From positions 62,001 through 126,000 of the IMG/VR virus record IMGVR_UViG_3300046542_000227: a stretch of 64,000 nucleotides of DNA; one strand, 5' to 3'. Every line of letters begins with the position of its first letter. Positions within the stretch are counted from its first letter, which is position 1. The translations under genes were made by a program, and so were the position numbers. Positions 1 to 37,350 of the stretch are shown here, one piece after another. The notes beneath the pieces were generated by a model, which ran no database searches, was not told where the DNA came from, and saw only the letters and a list, made by a program, of their open reading frames with translations.

Positions 1-26
1 CTGCGGGTAACGCTGGACAAGGTGGC

Positions 27-3000
27 TTGGGGATGCTCCTCAAGACACTCATGCAGAACCCTGAAGACGCCGCTGGTGGTTTGGCCGGTGATCAGATCGC
101 CAGCTTCCTGCATTCTTCTGTTATTCCCTCGATCGCACGTCGTGCACGTCCGGGCATGAAGAAGGTCTCTGACAAACTGACTGGCGGTGGCGATAGCCGC
201 ATTGCCTACCTGCTCGACAACATGGCGTCGATGTCGCAAGACTTCGCTAACGATGCCAAGAACTCGACCGGTATGAAAGGTCAGTTGCAGAAAATGGTGA
301 AGATGTTTGCCCCACAATTCCGGGTCAATGACCTGGCCAAAACGGGTACTTATCAAACCATTAACCAACCTGCGCAGTTTAACCAAATGACGCAGCGTTC
401 TATCGTCGAAGTGATCCCGGGTTATCTGGCCCGAATCCTTCAAGAAACCCGCATGATTCGTACGGGTGATGACTCGATTGGGCGTGAGGTCTTTGACATC
501 ACTCGGGGCAACTTTGTCCAAGAGAAGAAGTCGCAAGACAATCTGGCCAAACGTGTCGTGGGCGGTAACGCACGTCGTTCGGTGAAGTACTCGCTGAACT
601 CTGCGGTCGACGGTTTTACTGAAGACGGTAGCGTGCTGTCGCCTGAAGCTCGCCATGCGCTGGAAGAACGTTTGCTGCGTGATGCGATGGAAGGTAAGCA
701 CTTCGATCCAGTGACCTACGTCAAGCCTGAAGGTTATGCCCCGGGTACCAGTGCTGCGGTACTGGCTGAACTGACTGAGTTCTTTAAGAAGCAGTTCAAG
801 TTCAGTGAAGACGGTCAGCTGGCGAAGTCGACTGCGAACTTTACCAAGCGTCAGGAGTTCTCCACCAAGTTCAACGACCTGCGTGACACAGTACGTAACC
901 CAATGGCTGAGATCGAACGGATCATGGCTTCGGGTAACACGACCCAACTGCGTGACTTGGGTATTGTGCACATTGTTGAAGGTGAAGACCGTATCAACTT
1001 TGCTGTGCTGCGTGAACTCTACCGTGACCTCGGTGATCCGAGTGCTAGTGGTGAGCCACCACCGATGCCATCGCCTACTGGTCCGTTGCTCAGCAAGCTG
1101 CGTAAGCGGTTGCGTGAAGGCAACGAAGAGATCAAGAAACGTAGCGGGCGGGTGCGTGCTCGCGTTCGTGGTTTGGGTGATCGTGCTAAGGGCGCACTGA
1201 GTGACATGGAAGGTCCAGATGTTACGGCCGTCACTGAAGCTTTCAATGCCTCTAAAGCGCAAGCGCTAGTCCATGCTGACGATGTAGCCAAGCGCGCTAC
1301 CGATCTGATGATCGCAGGTAAAGAAGGTGTCGTTATTAAGGCATCGGAAATTCTGAGCGGTGAACTGATCGATGTTACTACCCAGAAAGTCATCGGTCGG
1401 GTTGAGGACATTAAAGGTGAAGTCATTGACATCACTGGACGTGTGCGTCTGACTCGGGCTGACGTGGCTCAAGGGTTGGTCAACGGTGAAGGGCGCGTGC
1501 TGGATCTGCTCAAACATCTGCCGAAGGGTATTCCCCCAAGTGTGATGTCGATGTTGCATGGTCAGCGCCAGCAGATCGGGAACCTGATCACTGCTGAGAA
1601 CGGGGCGATGTCTCGGGTTAAGGACCTTTACCTCGAAGGTGCTAACGATCCGGTCATTAAAGCTTCGGGTCTGCGTGCTGGTGAATACATCGACGTGGCC
1701 ACCAAGAAGGTTTTGGAGACCATCGATGACATCAGTGGCGCGGTAGTCCGTAAGGACCGTCCCGATGAAGTCCTGTTCACCACTGAAGAAGCTGCCGAGA
1801 AGTTGGTTGACAATTCCGGTAAGCGCTTTAAGTCGAGCAAGATTCTCAAGTATCTGGCATGGGCTACAGGCAAGAGCTTCAGCATCACCGCAGGTATGGC
1901 TTCGATCGGTTTGGCGGTTGCTCGCAAGATCGGGATGTTCGTTGCCAAGAAACTGACTGGTCTGGATGCTTACCTGCCTCCGGGTCGTGAGCCAATCCTC
2001 ACAACGTCCAAACTCAAACGTGGCGAGTACTACAACGAAGATGGTTCGGTGATCAAGTCGTTTGACGATCTCCGTGACGGTGTGTACACCGCTGATGGGA
2101 ATCTGCTGGTAGACCCAGACGACATTCCTAACCTGATCAACCGTGACGGCACTAAGCACACTGCGGCTAAACACCGTAGTAAGATTCGTAAGATCGCCAA
2201 GAAGATTGCCGGTCTGCCGATGGCTGCCGCTAAAGGCATTGGTAAGTTCTGGTGGAAACAGACCAAAGCTTACTATAAAGGCATGGGTAACATGGTTGCC
2301 AACAAGTTTGGTAAATCTAAAGCCAATGCTCAAGACTACAACGACAAGTTCATTACCCCTACCGATGGCCTGCTGGGCCAGATGCTCAACCTGCTGGACA
2401 AACGCCTACCTAAGGAAGCTGCGAAGGAAGGTAGCTGGCAAGATAAGCTCCAAGAAGCAGAAGCGGCTGCTAAGGCTAAGAAGGAAGGCACTAAAGCTGA
2501 ACGTGCTAACCGGAAGAAGGAAGCTGGGGGTGGGTTACTCGGTGGACTGGCGAAACTCTTGGGTCGGGGGAAGAAAGACGACGAGGAAGAGGAAGGCGGT
2601 GGTGACACCAACATCGATCTCGGTGGTGGCGAGGGTGGTGAAGGTAACGACCGGAAGAAGAATCGTAAGGTTCGTAAGAAGCCTCGCGGTAAGCTCGGTC
2701 GTGGCTGGGACAAACTGGCAAATACTAAACTCGGTAAGGGTGTAGGTCGCTTCGGTGGCAATGCTCTAATGCGAGGTGGTGGTACTGCAGCACGTTTGGC
2801 TGGGACTGGCGCCCGGGTGGCTGGCAGTGCGTTGCTAGGTGGTCTTGAGTTTGGTGCTTTGGGTCTGGGTGGTCTGGCTTCTGGTGCAGCCTCTATGGCT
2901 GGTACTGGCTTGGCCATGGCGGGTTCTGCTGCTGCGGCAGCGGGTACTGCGATCCTCGGTGTGTTGGCTTCGCCTGTGGTACTGGGTGCATTGGCAGTAG

Positions 3001-5897
3001 GTGCTGTAGCTGCCGGTGGTTATTGGTTGTGGAACCGGTCGAACAAAGTAAGCGGTGATTTCCGTGAACTGCGTTTGATGCAATACGGGATCGACTCCAC
3101 CAGTGACAAGCTGAAGATCCTCGAACTGGAAGCGTACTTGGAAACCTTCTCTCAGAAGGGTGCTGAGCCATCGCTGAACGTATCGGGTACCGATCCGAAG
3201 AAGATCTTTGAGATCATGGACATCGACGAAGACGAACCGGAGTCCATCGTTCGGATGGCTCGTTGGCTCGAACTGCGCTTTAAGCCAGTGTTCTTCGCTT
3301 GGTTGCGTGCCATGCACCAGCTCACCCCAACCGGTGTAGCTATCAACGAACTCGACGACAAACTTCCTGACGAAGCGAAGTATGACTTCTTCAACATCGT
3401 GAAGACGGTGCCGAATACAGTCTACGCTCAGCTGGGCAATCCGTTGGATGAAGATCCAATTGAGATTACCGCTGAGGACATCAACGCTAAAGTCACTGAA
3501 CTGATCGACAAATGGAAAGACAAGGCTAAGGCTAAAGACGAACAGAAGACGGGTGACACTACAGGGGCTACGGCGATTGTACCTCCGGGCGGTTCTAAGC
3601 CGGAAGACAAGGACAAGCCTAAAGCGGACGGCGCTGACAAACCTAAGGATGCTGAGAAGTCTAGTGCGTGGTATAGCATCAAGGCTGGCGCTAAAGGTCT
3701 GATGGGTGCGGTACCGGGTGCTGCTGCTATTGGTGGGCTGATCTCTGCTGTTAAAGAGGATTGGTTCGGCAAGATGTTCAGCGGTGCTTCGACGGCGGCC
3801 AAGATTGTAGCGACACCAGCATTGCTGGGTGGCATGGTCCTGAAGTCTGCGGTGATGATGGTTGGTGCTTTCAAGGCTGACAAACTCACCACGTTGCAAG
3901 CAGTGCGTGTACGTGCCTACGGGCGCATGCAGCTCGATGAGAAAACCATCAGTGCACTGTTTGAGTCTGAAGCCGAACTCTACAAACAAGTTCGTTACGA
4001 TACGGAAGGCCAGGCTTACTACGATGGCAACCTCGATCAGCTGATCGGCACCATGGCTAACATCTTTGGTGTGGACGTGACGGATGCAACCAGTCGCAAG
4101 GCTCAAGAGTTTACTGCTTGGATCCTGCAACGATTCATTCCTACCGGTCTGGCCTACTTTGCTGCGGTTAAGCAGAAGGGCAACGCCATTACCCCGAGCC
4201 GCGTTGAAACGGCTTTGGATGATGACGCTAAACTGTCGGTGGCCAATGCGTTGATGGTTGCTACCTACGAGATGAACGGGGAACAGATCTCTGTCTGGAA
4301 AGCCAACACGTTCTTTAATAACGGAACGTCCAGTCTGGACGCACTCAAGGCTGCGGCTGAGAAAGAGACAGCTGTCCTCAAAGAAGCGGCGGCGAAGGCT
4401 AAGTTAGCTTCTCCGGGTACTTCGGTTAAGGAACAAGAGAACCAAGAGAAGACCCAAGCGCGTACGACTGCTGAAAAGATCATGGATGGGGTTTCTAACC
4501 TCGGTGATAGCCTAAAGGAGAAATTCTCAAGCTTCGCTGACGGGGTGAAAGAATCCATCGGTGGTGCAGTCAACAGCGTTAAAGACTTCTTGGGTATGGG
4601 TCCGGGTGGCAAGAACGCTCAGACACCAGCTCCGTCTGCTTATAACACCGCGTACACCCCAGGTGGCACGTTGGAGCAGAAGGGTTCTACCTACTCGGCG
4701 TTTGCTGAGGGTAATGGTGGTGCTTGGAACAGCATCCCACTGCCTAAGTCGAACAAGTCCCGTGAAGCAGCAATGGAAACCCTGCGGGCCATTCAGGCCA
4801 TGACTGGGGTTGACGCAGAATTGCTGGCTACGTTTGCATCGATGGAGTCGAACTTTGACTACACGGTAAAAGCGGGAACGTCTTCGGCTACAGGTTGGTT
4901 CCAGTTCATCGACAAAACTTGGGACGGCATGCTTAAAGAACATGCTTCCAAATACGGCATCCCACCAGACAACAAGGACCGCTATTTGCGGAAGGACCCA
5001 CGGATCAACGGTCTGATGGGTGCTGAGTTCCTGAAGGGTAACTACAAGATTCTGGCTAAGGCATTGGGGCGTGCACCGACCGATACCGACCTGTACTTTG
5101 CTCACTTCTTGGGCCCACAGACAGCCGCTGGTTTCTTGAAGCGCGATCGGAATGCTATCGCAGCAAGTTTCTATCCAGATCAAGCTGGTGCTAACCGTAG
5201 CATCTTCTACAAGTCTACTGGTCAACCACGCACCATCGGTGAAGTCTACGACATCTTCGATGGCAAGGTACGCAAACACCGTAAGGGTGGGGGTGGTACT
5301 GATGTGGGTACAGCGACCACCGCAGTCGATCCACAGAAGGCGGCGGATGAGCAGGCCAAGGCAGTACAGGCCAGCGCAGACATCAAACCTCCAGCAGATC
5401 CAGTTACAGGTGAAGTAGGGACAAACCCGACAGGTGGTAACCCGAACGATAGCCTGAACATGACTGCAGATAAAGCAGCAGCACCAATGCGGATGGGTGA
5501 TCCATCGCAAGCCGGTCAGGGTGGTGGCGGTACAGCACCTTCTGGCGGTAGCAATCCAACTGTAGGCTCTGGGCAAGATCTGCCAGAGCGTAAGCAGGCT
5601 ATGGATGAAGCGATGCAGAAAGCCGCTGCAGGTGATAAAGCGCGTCAAGCAGCGAATCAAGAGAAGCAAGCGTTGTCGGCTACTTCGATGGATTTGATGC
5701 AAGAACAGTTGACCACTCAGCAACAGATGCGCGATTTGTTGAAGACCATTGCAGACAAACTGGGTTCCCCAGTCCAAGCAGCGCCAGCAGCACCGGCACC
5801 GGCCAGCAGCAAATCGGGTAATGATATGGGTAATCAACAAGCGCAAGCTGGGCGACAAGCGGGCAATGCCCCAACGCCAATCTCCTTCGCGCGATAA
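27..5897 (+). CDS. Large tail-associated protein with C-terminal lytic transglycosylase domain (phiKZ gp181-like); 5' end lies outside the window
   Basis: 1956-aa ORF, frame open to window start; Gly/Ala-rich hydrophobic tape-measure-like segment; SLT motifs ASMESNF, SSATGWFQFIDKTW, DLYFAHFLG. Confidence 0.85.
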   Translation: MGMLLKTLMQNPEDAAGGLAGDQIASFLHSSVIPSIARRARPGMKKVSDKLTGGGDSRIAYLLDNMASMSQDFANDAKNSTGMKGQLQKMVKMFAPQFRVNDLAKTGTYQTINQPAQFNQMTQRSIVEVIPGYLARILQETRMIRTGDDSIGREVFDITRGNFVQEKKSQDNLAKRVVGGNARRSVKYSLNSAVDGFTEDGSVLSPEARHALEERLLRDAMEGKHFDPVTYVKPEGYAPGTSAAVLAELTEFFKKQFKFSEDGQLAKSTANFTKRQEFSTKFNDLRDTVRNPMAEIERIMASGNTTQLRDLGIVHIVEGEDRINFAVLRELYRDLGDPSASGEPPPMPSPTGPLLSKLRKRLREGNEEIKKRSGRVRARVRGLGDRAKGALSDMEGPDVTAVTEAFNASKAQALVHADDVAKRATDLMIAGKEGVVIKASEILSGELIDVTTQKVIGRVEDIKGEVIDITGRVRLTRADVAQGLVNGEGRVLDLLKHLPKGIPPSVMSMLHGQRQQIGNLITAENGAMSRVKDLYLEGANDPVIKASGLRAGEYIDVATKKVLETIDDISGAVVRKDRPDEVLFTTEEAAEKLVDNSGKRFKSSKILKYLAWATGKSFSITAGMASIGLAVARKIGMFVAKKLTGLDAYLPPGREPILTTSKLKRGEYYNEDGSVIKSFDDLRDGVYTADGNLLVDPDDIPNLINRDGTKHTAAKHRSKIRKIAKKIAGLPMAAAKGIGKFWWKQTKAYYKGMGNMVANKFGKSKANAQDYNDKFITPTDGLLGQMLNLLDKRLPKEAAKEGSWQDKLQEAEAAAKAKKEGTKAERANRKKEAGGGLLGGLAKLLGRGKKDDEEEEGGGDTNIDLGGGEGGEGNDRKKNRKVRKKPRGKLGRGWDKLANTKLGKGVGRFGGNALMRGGGTAARLAGTGARVAGSALLGGLEFGALGLGGLASGAASMAGTGLAMAGSAAAAAGTAILGVLASPVVLGALAVGAVAAGGYWLWNRSNKVSGDFRELRLMQYGIDSTSDKLKILELEAYLETFSQKGAEPSLNVSGTDPKKIFEIMDIDEDEPESIVRMARWLELRFKPVFFAWLRAMHQLTPTGVAINELDDKLPDEAKYDFFNIVKTVPNTVYAQLGNPLDEDPIEITAEDINAKVTELIDKWKDKAKAKDEQKTGDTTGATAIVPPGGSKPEDKDKPKADGADKPKDAEKSSAWYSIKAGAKGLMGAVPGAAAIGGLISAVKEDWFGKMFSGASTAAKIVATPALLGGMVLKSAVMMVGAFKADKLTTLQAVRVRAYGRMQLDEKTISALFESEAELYKQVRYDTEGQAYYDGNLDQLIGTMANIFGVDVTDATSRKAQEFTAWILQRFIPTGLAYFAAVKQKGNAITPSRVETALDDDAKLSVANALMVATYEMNGEQISVWKANTFFNNGTSSLDALKAAAEKETAVLKEAAAKAKLASPGTSVKEQENQEKTQARTTAEKIMDGVSNLGDSLKEKFSSFADGVKESIGGAVNSVKDFLGMGPGGKNAQTPAPSAYNTAYTPGGTLEQKGSTYSAFAEGNGGAWNSIPLPKSNKSREAAMETLRAIQAMTGVDAELLATFASMESNFDYTVKAGTSSATGWFQFIDKTWDGMLKEHASKYGIPPDNKDRYLRKDPRINGLMGAEFLKGNYKILAKALGRAPTDTDLYFAHFLGPQTAAGFLKRDRNAIAASFYPDQAGANRSIFYKSTGQPRTIGEVYDIFDGKVRKHRKGGGGTDVGTATTAVDPQKAADEQAKAVQASADIKPPADPVTGEVGTNPTGGNPNDSLNMTADKAAAPMRMGDPSQAGQGGGGTAPSGGSNPTVGSGQDLPERKQAMDEAMQKAAAGDKARQAANQEKQALSATSMDLMQEQLTTQQQMRDLLKTIADKLGSPVQAAPAAPAPASSKSGNDMGNQQAQAGRQAGNAPTPISFAR

Positions 5898-5948: not shown

Positions 5949-7922
5949 ATGGCTGAGATTGATCGTGGTAGCATCTGGCTACGCCACGCGTTTCTTATTC
6001 CGACTGACAGTAGTGCGCTGTCGTATGGTAGTGGCACTAAACGTCGGCATGCCACATCGGCTGCGTTCAAGTTCACTAACACCTCACTGGGTGGCAACTA
6101 CGCCATCAACAACCCACCACAGTTCACTCGCTTCTGCGATATCCGCCATCCTGGTCGGGGTCGTACTAAGGAGCAAGCGAAGTATGGCATGGGGCGTTAC
6201 TACAGTGAGGCGATCGATGACACCAAAGACGTTATTCACGTCACCATGGGTGTTCCCCGTTTCTCCAGCTGGACGTCGTTCTTCACGAACTTCTATGACC
6301 GTCACGCTGCACAGTTAGCCAACACCGGTCGTGGTACCGACGTGTGGTTTGAGTTGGGTAACATCGGCGGGCACTTGGTGACCCTCCCGTTCCAACCGAT
6401 CATCATCGGGGTAACCGGTGTATCGCGGGTTATGAACTTCCTCGCGAAGTCTCAGCCCTCGAAGTGGTATTACTTCAAGCCGACCATGCACACGTATTGG
6501 TCTGCGGTAAACACCATCGCCAACGAATTCGCCATCGGCTTGGGTTTGATCCCCCGTGTCTTTGGTGGTACGCAGAAGGAACTGGAAGATCCGGGCTATG
6601 CGGTAACAGATGCCGACCGTGCTCGTTTCAACCAGATGTTCCCTGACCTGTTCCGTAAGGACGGTTCGATTGACGTAATGGCGTTGTCTCTTCGGACACA
6701 GCGTATCTCGAACGCCTCGCAAGACGCGTTTAAGAAAGTCAACGAATCGGCTACTAGTGTTAAACAGCTACGGGCCGAGGTTGAGAAGTACGTACAGGAA
6801 GTCCCTGCGGATCCAAACCCTGGGGTCGATGCCCGTAAGTTCTTCTTAGACTACATCAAAGAAGAGAAGCCTAAAGGTGGTGACTTAACCTCTAACGAAA
6901 GCTTCTCCTCGTGGGGTGAGCTGTCAGGTGTGTACGGGATGATCCGTGCTTACCAAAACGACGGTAGTCAATTCGTAACGTTCCGGGTTAACCATACTGG
7001 TACGGTATCGGAATCCTTCAGTAACCAAACTGAAGCGGTGGGTGTAGCGTCACAGTTGAACACCAAGGTTAAGGAAGGTCGTGCTGCCAGCTATGACTTC
7101 ATGGGTGGTAACATCACTGACGTAATCGGTACAGCATTCCAAGGTCTGAAGTCTGTGGCTGCGGGTGTACTGAACTCGGTGAACGCCTCGGGTGCTGCGG
7201 TACTGACCGGTGCTGCGTTTGTTGACGTACCTGAGATGTGGTCGGGTTCGACTGCCAACCTGCCTACTGCTGAATTTACGATTCCGTTGCCATGTGCTTA
7301 CGGGAACGTGATGTCACGCTTTATCAACATGTACATTCCAATCGCGATGATCCTACCGATGGGCTTACCCCTCTCGGCTGGTCGTTCTGCGTATACCTCG
7401 CCGTACATCTGTCAGGTCTTCCAGAAAGGCCGTGTGCAGAAACAGCTTTGTATCGTGGACAACATCACCATTACCCGTGGTACCGGTAATGTGGGTTGGA
7501 ACGCTGAAAAACACATGCTCGGTGCTGAAGTGTCTATTTCCTTTAAGGATTTGTCAAGCGTCATGCACATCCCGATCAAAGGTGGCTTTGCCTCGGGGAG
7601 CTGGCTGGATACCGCTGTAAAGGGTACTACTGTATTGGCTGCTGAAACACTGGGTGGTGACAAGTTGGAAGCTGTGGCACACATGGCAACCAACGGTGCC
7701 GTCTGGGATGAACAGAGCCTGTTCCAAGACTACGTCGCCTCTCTGACGTCGCAGTCATTCGCAGATACGTACTTTGTCGGTAACCGGATTAACCTGAATG
7801 TTACGCGGGCTATGCAAGACTTCACCAACTGGCGTAGTCCGTCTAACTTCCTGTCGTGGGCACTCGATGGGGATGTAGCGAGGTCACTCTCTGCGTTTGC
7901 ACAATCTACCGACCGTCTTTAA
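5949..7922 (+). CDS. Virion structural protein (phiKZ gp182-like position)
   Basis: 657-aa ORF with GAGG RBS directly after the gp181-like gene; call rests mainly on synteny. Confidence 0.6.
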
Positions 7923-7935
7923 TGGGGATGTAAAA

Positions 7936-8181
7936 ATGAAACAGATGCTTCTGAAGTTCTTCCTGCGTGGTACGCTGGCCATCGTGCTGGCCGATCGTGG
8001 TAAAGTCAAATTGGCCGTTGGCTTGGCTGAAGCCAGCTACGACGAAGGTGACAAGCCATTCACCCGCCGTGGGCGTGTGTATCGCTTCATCAAAGAGCAG
8101 GCGCCTGCCGGTACTGAGAAGTATCTGCTCGATGCTGGCACCGAAGCTGCTCAAGCTTTGGATGCGTTGTCGCGCAAATAA
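7936..8181 (+). CDS. Hypothetical protein
   Basis: ATG 7936 after GGGGA; phage-like codon usage. Confidence 0.6.
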   Translation: MKQMLLKFFLRGTLAIVLADRGKVKLAVGLAEASYDEGDKPFTRRGRVYRFIKEQAPAGTEKYLLDAGTEAAQALDALSRK

Positions 8182-8190
8182 AAACTGACT

Positions 8191-8234
8191 GAGCCGAAGG
8201 TATGGGGAAACCTGTACCTTCAGCTTTTATGTCC
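8191..8234 (+). terminator. Intrinsic terminator
   Basis: gaaggtatgg-ggaaa-cctgtaccttc hairpin, then ttttatgtcc. Confidence 0.65.
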
Positions 8235-8248
8235 TTAGGAGGATTGTC

Positions 8249-8659
8249 ATGAAAGAAGCATTGGAATGGTTAGAACAAAACGGTAAGGGACCAACCCTGG
8301 TTAATCCCAAGAACGTCACGTGGGAACGTGGTCCGATCAATCCTGAGTCGGGTGCACCGAACACTTACGTAGTCTCGGGTTTCGATCTGTCGACTAACCC
8401 TGAAGCCCAAGACGGACTGCAGTCAGAGCTGACCATCTATTTCCAGAACGGTGTGCTGCCTGAAGTTGGGGCTAACGGTGTAACGCCACAGATCCTGCTG
8501 GAACTGATGATCGATCGTTTCGAACATTACCAAGCTGGTGCTTTGGCCTGTGAAGAAAATGACCTCGCATTACAAGGTATGCGTGATGCAGTTGCGGCGA
8601 TTAAACAACGCCAAGCTGGTCGTGCTGAACGTGGTGTCTTGAACACCATGCAGAAATGA
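8249..8659 (+). CDS. tad1: Tad1/Acb2-family anti-defence nucleotide-signal sponge
   Basis: Motifs GAPNTY, TIYFQNG, NGVTPQILLELMIDRF..YQAG...CEEN and RAERGVLNT resemble Tad1 (GAYHEY, TIKFQKG, GV...LLEIVRDRL..FQAG...REN, RIERNVLGT); AGGAGG RBS. Confidence 0.75.
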   Translation: MKEALEWLEQNGKGPTLVNPKNVTWERGPINPESGAPNTYVVSGFDLSTNPEAQDGLQSELTIYFQNGVLPEVGANGVTPQILLELMIDRFEHYQAGALACEENDLALQGMRDAVAAIKQRQAGRAERGVLNTMQK

Positions 8660-8940: not shown

Positions 8941-9633
8941 ATGTCCCAGTCTCTCAAAGATCTCATTGCTGCAAACTATCGCAGATTCACTTGGGCCAAC
9001 CATATGGATCCTGCGTTTGGTGAGTATGCACTAGGTGTCGCTCTCGATGTGTTCCAGAATTGGGCACGTGACGAGATCGCATCGCGAGAGCATTTGGTGT
9101 CTGGTAACATTGTGCTATCGCAGTGGTTCGACGAACAATCTGTTCCGATGGTAGCTGAGCTACTAACGGACACCAACTTTCAAACATCCGCTAACGGAAC
9201 CGATGACATGACTGACAAGAACCCTATCGCTAAAACTCTGGCCGTTGTTGAGCGTCACGATCTGGAAGCCAAGATCAAGCTCAACGAGAACAACACCATC
9301 TTCATCCCTGAAGACCTGGTGGAAACCACGGCGGCCATGGACGCTGGTCTGACCATGGACCAAGTGAAGAAGTTCGAGAAGGCTAAGGGCGAACTGCTCC
9401 CGGCCGTAACTTACGTCGCCGGCAAGCTGTCGGTAGACGCCTTCAAGGCTGACCCGAACCTGTCCGAAACCGGCTTCAGCTACAATGTCGGTAAAACGGA
9501 AAAGGTTTCCGGTGTGTTCAGTCGCGACTCCAAAGAGCATGTGGTGGTCGTGGTCGAAACCACGCATCGCAATGCCGAGTTCAATCGTGTCGCCGCTGGC
9601 CTCAACTCGATGTTCGACGACATCAACTCCTGA
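8941..9633 (+). CDS. Hypothetical protein ending in FDDINS motif (alternative start about 9208)
   Basis: GAGGTG RBS; strongly biased codons in the C-terminal 140 aa. Confidence 0.75.
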   Translation: MSQSLKDLIAANYRRFTWANHMDPAFGEYALGVALDVFQNWARDEIASREHLVSGNIVLSQWFDEQSVPMVAELLTDTNFQTSANGTDDMTDKNPIAKTLAVVERHDLEAKIKLNENNTIFIPEDLVETTAAMDAGLTMDQVKKFEKAKGELLPAVTYVAGKLSVDAFKADPNLSETGFSYNVGKTEKVSGVFSRDSKEHVVVVVETTHRNAEFNRVAAGLNSMFDDINS

Positions 9634-9714: not shown

Positions 9715-11016
9715 ATGATGTCTGAAGTTAAATTGGGTCACATGGTAGCAATCGAAGGCAACAACGGTGTTGGTAAGTCGACTCAGGTCGAACTGGTCGC
9801 CGCACGTCTGCGTGCTGCTGGTCATGACGTTGTTGTGGTTCGTGAGCCCGGTGGTTCGGCTTTGGGTGAACACCTGCGTAGCGTGCTGAAAGATCAGCGC
9901 GACATCAAACTGAACAACACCACCGAACTGCTGCTGTTCGGCGCTCAGCGTGACGACATGTACCGCACCGTGGTACGTCCTGCTCTGGACGCCGGCAAAG
10001 TGGTCCTGGCTGATCGTAGCTACTTCTCCAGCTTCGCCTTCCAGGTTCACCCGTACATTGCACAGAACAACATTCTGCTGCAAGTATTCAACATGATCAC
10101 CTCCATGAGCATCCATCACCTGGGTGGTACTCCGGTGATCGTGTGCAACCTGGCCATGGACGAAGCACTGCGCCTGGAACGTCTGGCTGCGCTGCCGAAG
10201 CGTGAAGAAGACGCTTTCGAAGAACTGCCTGCCGATATCCAGAAACTGGTTGACGAAGCTTACGGCATGCTGGCACAACAGCCGGGCGTGACCACCTTCG
10301 ACGCTACCCGTGAAGTTGAAGAACTGGCTGACGCAATCTTCGATCAGATCCAGGTCAGCATGAACCAGCGCGTACAAGAAGCGGCCATCGCTGCTGAGCA
10401 GGCTGCTGCTCGTGCTGCACAAGCTGAAGTAGAAGATGTTGTTGATGGTGCTCCAGCAAACCCAGCTGCCGAAGCTGAAGCAGCCGCTGCTGATGCACCG
10501 GTTGACATTGCCGTGATCGAAGCTGAGATCAACGACAACATCACCCACCACATCACCAACCTGGTCGGCATGTTCCCAGGCGACTTCAGCGCTCACCAAG
10601 AGCAGTTCGATACTCACGTAGCTTCGCTGCGTAAGTGGGTTGCAATCCACATGGACGAGCTGCGTCTGCGTGAAGAGCCAATGTTCCCACAAGAAGCTCA
10701 ACACCGCACTCAGCAAATCGTCGGCAACATCGGCACCATGCTGGGCGGCTTCCTGACTCTGATCAACATCGGCGAGATGGTTGCCAATGCTGACAAGCTG
10801 GCTGCTGAACTGAAGGTTCGCCAAGAAGCCGAACTGAACGAAGTGGCACCTGAGCTGGTTGATGCACCTGCGGCAGAAGTGTCCGATGCTGAAGTTGCTG
10901 AGCGTCTGCGTGGTCAAACCCCACATGTAGCTCACGTTGACGAAGCTGGTTTCGTGGGTGACGAGTCCGACTCGGCGTACGCTGTTGAAGGTCGTAACGA
11001 AGCACCAGGTCAGTAA
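9715..11016 (+). CDS. tmk: Thymidylate kinase with long acidic C-terminal extension
   Basis: IEGNNGVGKST P-loop, REPGG, ELLLFGAQR, VLADRSYFSSFAFQ. Confidence 0.9.
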   Translation: MMSEVKLGHMVAIEGNNGVGKSTQVELVAARLRAAGHDVVVVREPGGSALGEHLRSVLKDQRDIKLNNTTELLLFGAQRDDMYRTVVRPALDAGKVVLADRSYFSSFAFQVHPYIAQNNILLQVFNMITSMSIHHLGGTPVIVCNLAMDEALRLERLAALPKREEDAFEELPADIQKLVDEAYGMLAQQPGVTTFDATREVEELADAIFDQIQVSMNQRVQEAAIAAEQAAARAAQAEVEDVVDGAPANPAAEAEAAAADAPVDIAVIEAEINDNITHHITNLVGMFPGDFSAHQEQFDTHVASLRKWVAIHMDELRLREEPMFPQEAQHRTQQIVGNIGTMLGGFLTLINIGEMVANADKLAAELKVRQEAELNEVAPELVDAPAAEVSDAEVAERLRGQTPHVAHVDEAGFVGDESDSAYAVEGRNEAPGQ

Positions 11017-37029: not shown

Positions 37030-37350
37030 ATGGATATTTCTATTAAGTTGCCTGACCCTCTGCAGATTGCCAAAGAAGGGTTGTTGGAAGAGGTCATGGC
37101 TTCCGCTCGTTACAATGCTGATTGGACCATGGAGAAGCGGGATCTGACCGATGAAGTCCGTGAGTTGGTGCACTACGCTGCTCGTAACGTGGCTTGCGGC
37201 ATCATGGACATCCTCGATGGCAATACCGATCAGGGTCAGTATGTTCTGCTGCCACTGTCTGTAGTCACAGGTTTTACCGATGAACTCCCGACTATGGCTG
37301 GGGATCTGTCGGAACAACTCCAAGACCTTTACGAAACGATCAACGACTGA
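37030..37350 (+). CDS. DIN-motif family protein (ends YETIND)
   Basis: GAGGTG RBS; tandem paralog 1. Confidence 0.75.
   Translation: MDISIKLPDPLQIAKEGLLEEVMASARYNADWTMEKRDLTDEVRELVHYAARNVACGIMDILDGNTDQGQYVLLPLSVVTGFTDELPTMAGDLSEQLQDLYETIND

What the first reader, a model, noticed from the sequence alone, without database searches (positions are those of the whole stretch)
8249..8659. Tad1-like immune-signal sponge in a jumbo phage
Seen: Tad1-like motif order along the whole protein. Known: Tad1 and Acb2 sequester gcADPR and cyclic oligonucleotides of Thoeris and CBASS. Some positions differ from Tad1 as I recall it (NTY for HEY, EEN for REN), so ligand specificity may differ. Inference: protection against signalling defences that a phage nucleus does not block.
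Basis: partly seen in the sequence, partly recalled or inferred. Interest (0 to 1): 0.6.

Follow-up and report, generated by a model that had tools for sequence, protein, structure and literature searches.

The report
Short Tad1 immune-signal sponge, jumbo phage
This 136-residue gene of a nucleus-forming jumbo phage is a member of the known Tad1 family of phage proteins that soak up bacterial immune signals. It is the positional counterpart of the phiKZ Tad1 (gp184) but lacks gp184's capsid-packaging extension, so it is a sound but largely expected finding.

Summary
The ORF at 8249-8659 (+) is real: 136 aa, with AGGAGG 6 nt upstream. It belongs to the Tad1 family. The window protein matches CbTad1 structures at E 6e-8 and phiKZ gp184 at E 5e-24. 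A family profile finds only gp184 and Tad1 in the whole PDB (E 2e-45 to 4e-22). The AF2 model matches only Tad1 over its full length (Foldseek E 2e-6; VIA Z 8.3-9.6).

The adenine/diphosphate pocket is kept (Y94, N104, R121, R125, R90, G68). The cyclic-trinucleotide pair is lost (R90 to E102, T97 to Q109), as is the hexamer Met-Trp patch (A116, A117).

The genome is a 267-kb phage that encodes chimallin. The gene sits between the gp182 homologue and thymidylate kinase, as phiKZ gp184 does. Papers already name gp184 as Tad1, packaged in the capsid and injected.

The six other Pseudomonas chimallivirus lineages I examined carry a 193-231-aa form. The Noxifer-like clade, including this window, carries a 134-136-aa form without the packaging insert. 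A conserved hairpin plus TATG precedes the gene.

Verdict: new member of a known kind; binding and anti-defence activity are untested.

The parts
8249..8659 (+). Tad1-family gene, 136 aa (P0001); the only copy in the 267-kb genome
   Evidence: ORF list and translation. PDB phmmer: Tad1 E 6e-8, gp184 E 5e-24. PHROG 2428 E 6e-26. One match in the genome.
8252..8308 (+). N-terminal appendage (residues 2-20): a short helix (2-10) with invariant W7, then a low-confidence linker. The LxW motif is shared with the extreme N-terminus of the long capsid-packaged forms. It is absent from the non-jumbo Tad1 homologues in alignment A2.
   Evidence: AF2 model: helix 2-10, pLDDT about 50. Alignments A1 and A4. 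Not in the predicted dimer interface.
8318..8443 (+). Antiparallel beta-sheet part of the Tad1 fold (strands 24-27, 38-43, 60-65). It includes N38, the counterpart of CbTad1 H29.
   Evidence: residue map.
8486..8632 (+). C-terminal two-helix hairpin (helices 80-96 and 102-128). It carries pocket residues R90, Y94, L99, N104, R121 and R125. It also carries the changed trinucleotide/hexamer positions E102, Q109, A116 and A117.
   Evidence: pLDDT 84-94. N104, R121 and R125 are invariant in 23 sequences. Residue roles are taken from papers.
8633..8656 (+). C-terminal tail (GVLNTMQK), the counterpart of the CbTad1 lid (residues 116-122) that closes over the ligand
   Evidence: Alignment; lid described.
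8237..8242 (+). Shine-Dalgarno AGGAGG, 6 nt before the ATG
   Evidence: Sequence.
8196..8221 (+). Terminator-like hairpin after the upstream 81-aa gene (11 pairs, loop of 4). It is conserved in the Noxifer-like clade, with compensatory changes in the outer stem.
   Evidence: (z -2.7).
8227..8231 (+). Invariant TTATG directly after the hairpin, 18 nt before the start codon. It matches the phiKZ late-promoter core TATG, whose G is the transcription start. Its function here is inferred, not shown.
   Evidence: Invariant in 4 genomes while the flanks vary. phiKZ consensus from PMC4666361. A like module lies upstream of the window genes at 37030 and 53033.

Best explanation
The gene encodes a free-standing Tad1-family sponge. 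Inferred mechanism: the protein forms at least homodimers. The pocket at the dimer interface stacks an adenine between Y94 and R121, reads it with N104, and holds the phosphates with R121 and R125. The C-terminal tail closes as a lid. In this way the protein would sequester the gcADPR signal of type I Thoeris, and possibly some cyclic dinucleotides, before these reach their effectors in the cytoplasm. The phage nucleus gives no protection there. Two predicted differences from canonical CbTad1/CmTad1 are the loss of the cyclic-trinucleotide site and possibly of the hexamer that forms it. The difference from phiKZ gp184 is that this copy has no capsid-targeting or protease-released extension. 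It is therefore most likely made after infection rather than delivered preloaded, possibly from its own TATG-type promoter. Shown here: homology, fold, conserved residues, synteny and architecture. Inferred: ligand, oligomeric state, timing of expression and anti-defence effect.
For: Sequence: Tad1 E 6e-8; gp184 E 5e-24; profile: gp184 2e-45, CbTad1 2e-25, CmTad1 4e-22, nothing else in the PDB. Fold: the 20 hits at E <= 0.001 are all Tad1; the next fold is at E 0.1; Z 8.3-9.6 over residues 17-136. Pocket: CbTad1 F82/N92/R109/R113/R78/G55 map to Y94/N104/R121/R125/R90/G68 (alignment; roles). N104, R121, R125 and G68 are invariant in 23 sequences. Self-association: homodimer score 0.86 against a best control of 0.00. 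That mark was reached by 20 of 30 proteins solved as pairs of one chain and 1 of 23 solved as single chains. The runs agree in at least 90% of contacts and the partner pLDDT is at least 75. The interface includes residues 94, 104 and 121. Context: chimallin is present, and the order gp182 homologue, Tad1, thymidylate kinase matches phiKZ and Noxifer. gp184 is named Tad1, injected and anti-Thoeris/CBASS. No packaging extension: 136 aa against 193-231 aa, and nothing in the genome matches gp184 residues 1-117. Trinucleotide site: E102 and Q109. phiKZ lacking nlp1 stays sensitive to cA3-NucC CBASS and needs Acb2 for rescue. This fits a jumbo-phage Tad1 that does not absorb cA3.
Against: No binding or infection data exist for this protein. 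Four of the 11 gcADPR contacts of CbTad1 differ: H29 to N38, R57 to L70, G120 to N132 (a backbone contact) and N122 to M134. A fifth is a conservative change (F87 to L99). The model is of moderate quality (mean pLDDT 70.7; loops and the N-terminus are poor). The dimer pass may come from the model's memory of solved Tad1 complexes. The local Pfam scan did not detect PF24729, although the precomputed annotation of the homologues lists it. The terminator-like hairpin leaves only about 27 nt for a promoter, and TATG is a 4-nt motif. The conserved N-terminal LxW helix has no explained role and could still mediate packaging.
Confidence: 0.8

Rival explanations
1. It is a Tad1-fold sponge, but its natural ligand is not gcADPR. 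It could be a cyclic dinucleotide only, or another ADP-ribose-derived or adenine-containing signal used by Pseudomonas defences.
For: The residues that read the ribose-ribose linkage in CbTad1 are changed (H29 to N38, N122 to M134, R57 to L70). Position 38 varies within the clade (N, H, S or A). The window's subclade also has L99 and Q109 where its sisters have F and T/S. Sponge families are known to shift specificity.
Against: The adenine and phosphate contacts and R90/G68 are conserved. In a published test of 20 diverse Tad1 homologues, family members inhibited type I Thoeris and CBASS.
Confidence: 0.15
2. It is mainly a virion (minor capsid) protein like phiKZ gp184, and its sponge activity is secondary or lost.
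For: gp184 is a modelled component of the phiKZ capsid vertex complex. 201phi2-1 gp280 was found by mass spectrometry. Several Bacillus phage homologues are annotated 'structural protein'. The gene lies next to tail and structural genes. The N-terminal LxW motif is shared with the packaged forms.
Against: The window protein matches only the C-terminal Tad1 domain of gp184 (residues 114-226). A preprint describes that domain as cleaved off and injected, with the N-terminus being the part wedged in the capsid. The capsid-bound, beta-rich and acidic insert is absent here. gp184 is dispensable for phiKZ growth.
Confidence: 0.04
3. It is a decaying or inactive remnant of a longer gp184-like gene that lost its packaging module.
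For: It is shorter than the forms in the six other Pseudomonas chimallivirus lineages examined.
Against: The frame is intact with a strong ribosome-binding site. The 134-136-aa form is kept across a clade at 57-97% identity with invariant pocket residues. The short clade is well supported as sister to the long clade (100/98). Non-jumbo Tad1 proteins have the same short architecture.
Confidence: 0.02

Closest known systems
phiKZ gp184 (Tad1 of Pseudomonas phage phiKZ; PDB 8y6v chain I)
   Same: It is the best database match: 46% identity over residues 26-133, E 5e-24. It occupies the same genomic position between the gp182 homologue and thymidylate kinase, in a chimallin-encoding phage. It has the same 'CEEN' in place of the trinucleotide-binding Arg. 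Both share the N-terminal LxW motif.
   Different: gp184 has 230 aa. About 95 extra residues (an acidic linker and a beta-rich segment) lie between the N-terminal motif and the Tad1 core. These tie it to the capsid vertex complex and are cut by the head protease, so that the Tad1 domain is injected. The window protein lacks all of this. The window protein keeps the counterpart of CbTad1 R78 (R90), which is Leu in gp184, and has a CbTad1-like C-terminal lid (VLNT), which gp184 does not.
CbTad1 / CmTad1 (PDB 7uav, 7uaw, 8smd, 8kbb-8kbh)
   Same: Same fold (Z 8.3-9.6) and about the same length. The adenine/phosphate pocket residues are conserved, as is the C-terminal lid motif.
   Different: Identity is only 19-32% in the structural alignments. 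The trinucleotide pair R90/T97 becomes E102/Q109. The hexamer Met-Trp patch becomes Ala-Ala. H29, R57 and N122 are changed. There is an extra N-terminal helix.
Pseudomonas phage Noxifer gp200 (NOXIFER_200, annotated hypothetical protein)
   Same: 65% identity over the full length, the same short architecture, the same neighbours, and the same conserved hairpin-TTATG upstream.
   Different: Noxifer has Ser/Ala at position 38, Phe at 99 and Thr at 109, where the window has Asn, Leu and Gln.
Acb2 (T4 Vs.4, PDB 7uq2)
   Same: It shares only the two-helix hairpin (Z 6.0 over residues 79-136). Pfam groups the two as Acb2_Tad1_hairpin.
   Different: There is no sequence match to Acb2 at E <= 10 or with the profile at E <= 1. 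Acb2 lacks the beta-sheet half.

Membership tests
Tad1 (Thoeris anti-defence 1) sponge family | Significant sequence homology to experimentally characterised Tad1 proteins | tested here: met
   Single sequence: E 6e-8 to CbTad1, 1e-5 to CmTad1, 5e-24 to phiKZ gp184. Profile: 2e-25, 4e-22 and 2e-45, with no other PDB family at E <= 1.
Tad1 (Thoeris anti-defence 1) sponge family | Fold: N-terminal antiparallel beta-sheet plus C-terminal two-helix hairpin | tested here: met
   The AF2 model has strands 24-27, 38-43 and 60-65 and helices 80-96 and 102-128. The Foldseek hits at E <= 0.001 are all Tad1. VIA gives Z 8.3-9.6 with 106-115 residues aligned and rmsd 4.3-5.5. The model is only moderate (pLDDT 70.7).
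Tad1 (Thoeris anti-defence 1) sponge family | gcADPR/cyclic-dinucleotide pocket residues whose mutation abolishes binding (CbTad1 F82, N92, R109, R113) | tested here: met
   Y94, N104, R121 and R125 by alignment. N104, R121 and R125 are invariant and position 94 is always F or Y in 23 sequences.
Tad1 (Thoeris anti-defence 1) sponge family | Contacts that read the ribose-ribose linkage and seal the pocket (CbTad1 H29, G55, R57, R78, F87, G120, N122) | tested here: inconclusive
   Kept: G68, R90, and L99 (hydrophobic in place of F87). Changed: N38, L70, N132, M134. Loop alignment is uncertain.
Tad1 (Thoeris anti-defence 1) sponge family | Cyclic-trinucleotide site at the trimer-of-dimers interface (CbTad1 R90, T97), a feature of the characterised hexamers | tested here: not met
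   E102 and Q109. Glu or Pro stands at this position in all jumbo-phage forms. The hexamer Met-Trp patch is Ala-Ala. This lowers the expectation of cA3 binding, not family membership.
Tad1 (Thoeris anti-defence 1) sponge family | Homo-oligomer with pockets at the dimer interface | tested here: met
   Prediction only. The two-copy complex scored 0.86 against a best control of 0.00. The mark was reached by 20 of 30 proteins solved as pairs and 1 of 23 solved as single chains. Runs agree in at least 90% of contacts, with partner pLDDT at least 75. The result may reflect memory of solved Tad1 complexes. The hexamer could not be tested.
Tad1 (Thoeris anti-defence 1) sponge family | Binds gcADPR and rescues phage from Thoeris | not testable with these tools
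   Needs ITC or native-gel assays and plaque assays.
Tad1 (Thoeris anti-defence 1) sponge family | Match to Pfam PF24729 (Acb2_Tad1_hairpin) | tested here: inconclusive
   There is no hit in the local Pfam scan at E <= 10 or in the genome search with PF24729.2. The precomputed annotation of all 9 homologues at 57-97% identity lists PF24729.3.
Capsid-packaged, injected Tad1 of the phiKZ gp184 type | N-terminal extension that binds the capsid vertex complex and is removed by the head protease | tested here: not met
   136 aa against 193-231 aa. The insert is absent, and nothing in the genome matches gp184 residues 1-117.
Capsid-packaged, injected Tad1 of the phiKZ gp184 type | Syntenic position downstream of the gp181/gp182 homologues and upstream of thymidylate kinase in a chimallin-encoding phage | tested here: met
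Acb2 | Sequence or whole-fold similarity to Acb2 | tested here: not met
   There is no Acb2 chain. Only the helical hairpin aligns (Z 6.0, 54 residues).

The most novel reading that the evidence does not exclude
Nucleus-forming phages may use two delivery modes for the same sponge. phiKZ-like, 201phi2-1-like, Phabio-like and PS119XW-like phages preload Tad1 into the capsid through an inserted packaging module. The Noxifer-like clade, including this window, makes a minimal form after infection from its own TATG-type promoter. That form would be dimer-only and restricted to gcADPR or cyclic dinucleotides. A bolder alternative: the roughly 10-residue LxW N-terminal helix, conserved in both forms and absent from the non-jumbo Tad1s in alignment A2, is itself a minimal capsid-targeting peptide. 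In that case even the short form would be packaged, uncleaved.
Probability: 0.25. Interest if true: 0.45.

Novelty: new member of a known kind. Interest (0 to 1): 0.25.

Why it matters
The result adds a diverged Tad1 (46% identical to phiKZ Tad1, about 30% to the crystallised ones) from an uncultivated 267-kb Pseudomonas-type chimallivirus. It shows that the Noxifer-like clade keeps the sponge at the ancestral locus but without the capsid-packaging module. Comparing the short and long forms could help define what makes a jumbo-phage protein packaged and injected. It could also show whether sponge timing (preloaded or newly made) matters against Thoeris. The shared loss of the trinucleotide-binding Arg/Thr pair and of the hexamer patch in all jumbo-phage forms is a testable prediction about their ligand range. 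None of this changes the current picture of Tad1.

Tried and rejected
- Pfam, NCBIfam and PADLOC scans of the protein gave nothing useful. The only Pfam hit was DUF240 at E 0.11, which I take as chance.
- PF24729 did not register in the genome.
- The final Nature version of Li et al. 2024 (PMC12159963) is not held. Its 2023 preprint does not mention phiKZ. What phiKZ Tad1 binds therefore rests on secondary statements.
- I considered whether the upstream 94-aa ORF (7897-8181) is a split-off N-terminal half of gp184, since 94 + 136 = 230. I rejected this. Its likely product of 81 aa (from the ATG at 7936) is 75% identical to Noxifer gp199 and has no similarity to gp183. tblastn with the whole of gp184 matched the genome only through residues 118-226, at the Tad1 gene.
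- No sigma-70-like promoter lies nearby.
- The tree cannot say whether the insert was gained in the long clade or lost in the short one, because the two are sister clades.
- No Tad2-like gene is present in the genome.

Full report
**1. The observation**

The frame 8249-8659 (+) is open from an ATG to a TGA and encodes 136 residues. AGGAGG lies at 8237-8242, 6 nt before the start.

phmmer against all PDB chain sequences gives eight matches:
- phiKZ gp184 (8y6v chain I, 230 aa): E 5e-24, covering residues 22-133 of the query and 114-226 of the chain.
- Six distinct Tad1 sequences: CbTad1 in 7uav, 8kbe, 8kbg and 8kbh at E about 6e-8 over residues 33-134, and CmTad1 in 8kbb at E 1e-5.
- One chance-level hit.

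In the printed alignment the CbTad1 letters HEY and REN lie opposite N38-T39-Y40 and E102-E103-N104.

PHROG 2428 (function unknown in that library) covers residues 2-136 at E 6e-26. Two longer PHROGs match only through their C-terminal halves. Pfam, NCBIfam and PADLOC gave nothing.

**2. Relatives and profile**

The word search found nine proteins of 134-136 aa at 57-97% identity. One is from a compost metagenome. All carry a precomputed PF24729 label, which is Acb2_Tad1_hairpin.

tblastn against phage records found 200 records:
- Noxifer: 65% identity over the full length.
- phiKZ-like phages: 44-46% over residues 26-133.
- Many Bacillus phages, one of which (SPG24) annotates the hit as Tad1.

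A scan of IMG/VR gave 14 loci.

A profile of 23 sequences (A2) finds only two things in the whole PDB: gp184 (2e-45) and Tad1 chains (2e-25 to 4e-22). The match to CbTad1 runs over nearly its whole length. No Acb2 chain appears.

**3. Fold**

The AlphaFold2 model built on A2 has mean pLDDT 70.7. The helical hairpin scores 84-94, while the N-terminus and loops are poor. Its elements are a helix at 2-10, three strands, and helices at 80-96 and 102-128.

Foldseek against the PDB returns 20 hits at E <= 0.001, all of them CbTad1 or CmTad1 (best E 2e-6, TM 0.57-0.66). The next fold comes at E 0.1.

VIA-align gives Z 8.3-9.6 for the eight Tad1 entries, over residues 17-136, with 106-115 residues aligned and rmsd 4.3-5.5. 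Every other row covers only the hairpin at 79-136. That includes T4 Vs.4/Acb2 at Z 6.0.

**4. Residues**

I counted the alignment against the residue numbers used in the papers. All eight residues I checked agree with an offset of +1 for chain 8kbh_I.

| CbTad1 residue | Role | Window residue | Status |
|---|---|---|---|
| F82 | adenine stack | Y94 | kept (aromatic) |
| R109 | adenine stack, phosphates | R121 | kept |
| N92 | reads adenine | N104 | kept |
| R113 | phosphates | R125 | kept |
| R78 | ribose OH | R90 | kept |
| G55 | backbone NH | G68 | kept |
| F87 | adenosine ribose | L99 | conservative change |
| H29 | ribose-ribose linkage | N38 | changed |
| R57 | phosphates, sealing loop | L70 | changed |
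| G120 | backbone contact | N132 | changed |
| N122 | ribose-ribose linkage | M134 | changed |
| R90 | cyclic-trinucleotide phosphate | E102 | changed |
| T97 | cyclic-trinucleotide phosphate | Q109 | changed |
| M104, W105 | hexamer contact | A116, A117 | changed |

N104, R121, R125 and G68 are invariant in all 23 sequences of A2. Every jumbo-phage form has Glu, or once Pro, at the R90 position and lacks the Trp. The non-jumbo relatives L009-L012 and L016 keep Lys, Thr and Trp.

From sequence alone I therefore predict that the gcADPR/dinucleotide pocket is kept and the trinucleotide site is lost. One indirect published observation fits. phiKZ lacking nlp1 is sensitive to the cA3-dependent NucC CBASS and is rescued by adding Acb2, so the phage's own Tad1 does not absorb that signal.

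**5. Self-association**

A two-copy complex prediction scored 0.86, against 0.00 for the best of three controls. That mark was reached by 20 of 30 proteins solved as pairs of one chain, and by 1 of 23 proteins solved as single chains. The runs agree in at least 90% of contacts, and the partner pLDDT is at least 75.

The interface includes residues 94, 104 and 121. Because Tad1 complexes are solved, the pass may come from the model's memory. It shows likeness, not binding. The hexamer could not be tested.

**6. Genome and neighbourhood**

The window is bases 62001-126000 of a 267,320-bp virus record with direct terminal repeats, which CheckV rates as complete. The genome encodes a homologue of phiKZ gp54, chimallin (39% identity, E 2e-107). 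It is therefore a nucleus-forming jumbo phage. Its nearest named relatives are the Pseudomonas fluorescens phages Noxifer and Phabio.

The gene order in the window is:
- a very long tail-gene ORF, open at the window's 5' end and ending at 5897;
- a 657-aa gp182 homologue (5949-7922; 60% identity; PHROG 3181);
- an 81-aa gene (7936-8181; 75% identical to Noxifer gp199; no similarity to gp183);
- the Tad1 gene;
- a 230-aa protein whose C-terminal part resembles gp186;
- thymidylate kinase (9715-11016).

This is the same order as in phiKZ (gp181 to gp188) and in Noxifer. The Tad1 gene is the only copy in the genome, and there is no Tad2-like gene.

**7. What is already known**

phiKZ gp184 was modelled on the inner face of the phiKZ capsid vertex, as a mostly beta-stranded piece. 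It is cut by the head protease gp175 (PMC11297242).

A 2025 preprint calls gp184 Tad1. It says the gene is dispensable. [quoted passage not shown] It adds that Tad1 is so far the only anti-defence protein described in jumbo phages, citing Li et al., Nature 2024. I could not read that paper.

A Tad1-like sponge in a jumbo phage is thus an established fact, not a discovery.

**8. What is particular here**

The six other Pseudomonas chimallivirus lineages I looked at carry a long form at this locus:

| Phage or locus | Length (aa) |
|---|---|
| phiKZ | 230 |
| L006 | 231 |
| Phabio | 203 |
| Viktualia | 202 |
| 201phi2-1 gp280 (detected by mass spectrometry) | 199 |
| PS119XW | 193 |

The Noxifer-like clade has 134-136 aa. 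It comprises Noxifer, L003, L005, the window and the metagenomic relatives P0002-P0010.

The alignment shows the extreme N-terminus (M-x-x-x-L-x-W, with W7 invariant) shared by both forms. The long forms hold a 60-95-residue acidic insert between it and the Tad1 core. In phiKZ and L006 the insert also has a beta-rich part. Nothing in the window's genome matches gp184 residues 1-117.

On a tree of the shared columns, the jumbo forms make one clade (support 100/99). It splits into a long clade (98/91) and a short clade (100/98). One change of architecture therefore suffices, but its direction is open.

The short clade keeps R90 and a CbTad1-like C-terminal lid (VLNT). The long clade has lost both.

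**9. Upstream element**

An 11-pair hairpin (8196-8221) followed by AGCTTTTATG lies between the 81-aa gene and the Tad1 gene. In the four genomes of the clade the inner stem is nearly invariant. The outer stem changes in a compensatory way. TTATG is invariant while its flanks vary.

phiKZ late promoters have the core TATG, with the G as the transcription start, read by the non-virion RNA polymerase (PMC4666361). A like 'hairpin, then TTTTATG(T/C)CC' module precedes the window genes at 37030 and 53033. TATG is two to three times enriched 30-50 nt before start codons in this genome.

I read this as a terminator followed by a TATG-type promoter. That is inference from a 4-nt motif.

**10. Conclusion**

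The finding is correct and ordinary: a new, diverged member of the Tad1 family, orthologous by position to phiKZ Tad1. Its own points of interest are three:
- the missing packaging module;
- the predicted loss of the trinucleotide site and hexamer patch, shared with all the jumbo-phage forms;
- the unexplained conserved N-terminal helix.

Ligand binding, oligomeric state, timing of expression and anti-defence activity remain untested.

Noticed in passing
window 8196-8231; also upstream of the genes at 37030 and 53033: A recurring intergenic module: a GC-rich hairpin followed at once by TTTTATG(T/C)CC and a ribosome-binding site. It may be a terminator plus a phiKZ-type TATG late promoter. In the Tad1 spacer it is conserved across the Noxifer-like clade, with compensatory stem changes.
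   Followed up: partly
window 8249-8278 (residues 1-10); L002:3650-3680; L006:4632-4660: The N-terminal motif M-x-x-x-L-x-W-(L/M/A) is shared by the short and the long (capsid-packaged) jumbo-phage Tad1 forms. It is absent from the non-jumbo Tad1 homologues in alignment A2. Its role is unknown; it could be a targeting or partner-binding peptide.
   Followed up: partly
phage records (Bacillus phages Bcp1, BCP8-2, BC-T25, BCP01, vB_BanH_McCartney; Lactococcus phage 1706): Several non-jumbo phage records annotate the region matching the Tad1 hairpin as a 'structural protein'. This hints that virion association of Tad1-like domains may not be limited to phiKZ-like phages.
   Followed up: no
window 9715-11016: The thymidylate kinase is 433 aa. 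The Pfam kinase domain covers only residues 13-208. The rest is a long Ala/Glu-rich C-terminal extension that does not align with phiKZ gp188, where tblastn matched only gp188 residues 3-206.
   Followed up: no
window 8941-9633: A 230-aa protein whose residues 97-230 match PHROG 16459 and phiKZ gp186 (134 aa). Its first 96 or so residues are an extra N-terminal part with no match.
   Followed up: no
window 3-5897: A very long ORF, at least 1,956 aa and open at the window's 5' end. It occupies the position of phiKZ gp181 (tail-associated endolysin) and NOXIFER_197 ('tail fiber protein').
   Followed up: no
P0001 and its homologues P0002-P0010: The precomputed annotation lists PF24729.3 for all close homologues. 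The local Pfam-A scan and the genome search with PF24729.2 give no hit at all for this protein. This is probably a difference between model versions.
   Followed up: partly
window residues 38, 99 and 109 (8360-8362, 8543-8545, 8573-8575): The window's own subclade (P0001-P0003) differs from its sister subclades at three ligand-related positions at once. It has N where others have H, S or A; L where others have F; and Q where others have T, S or V. This could mean a shift in specificity or relaxed constraint.
   Followed up: no
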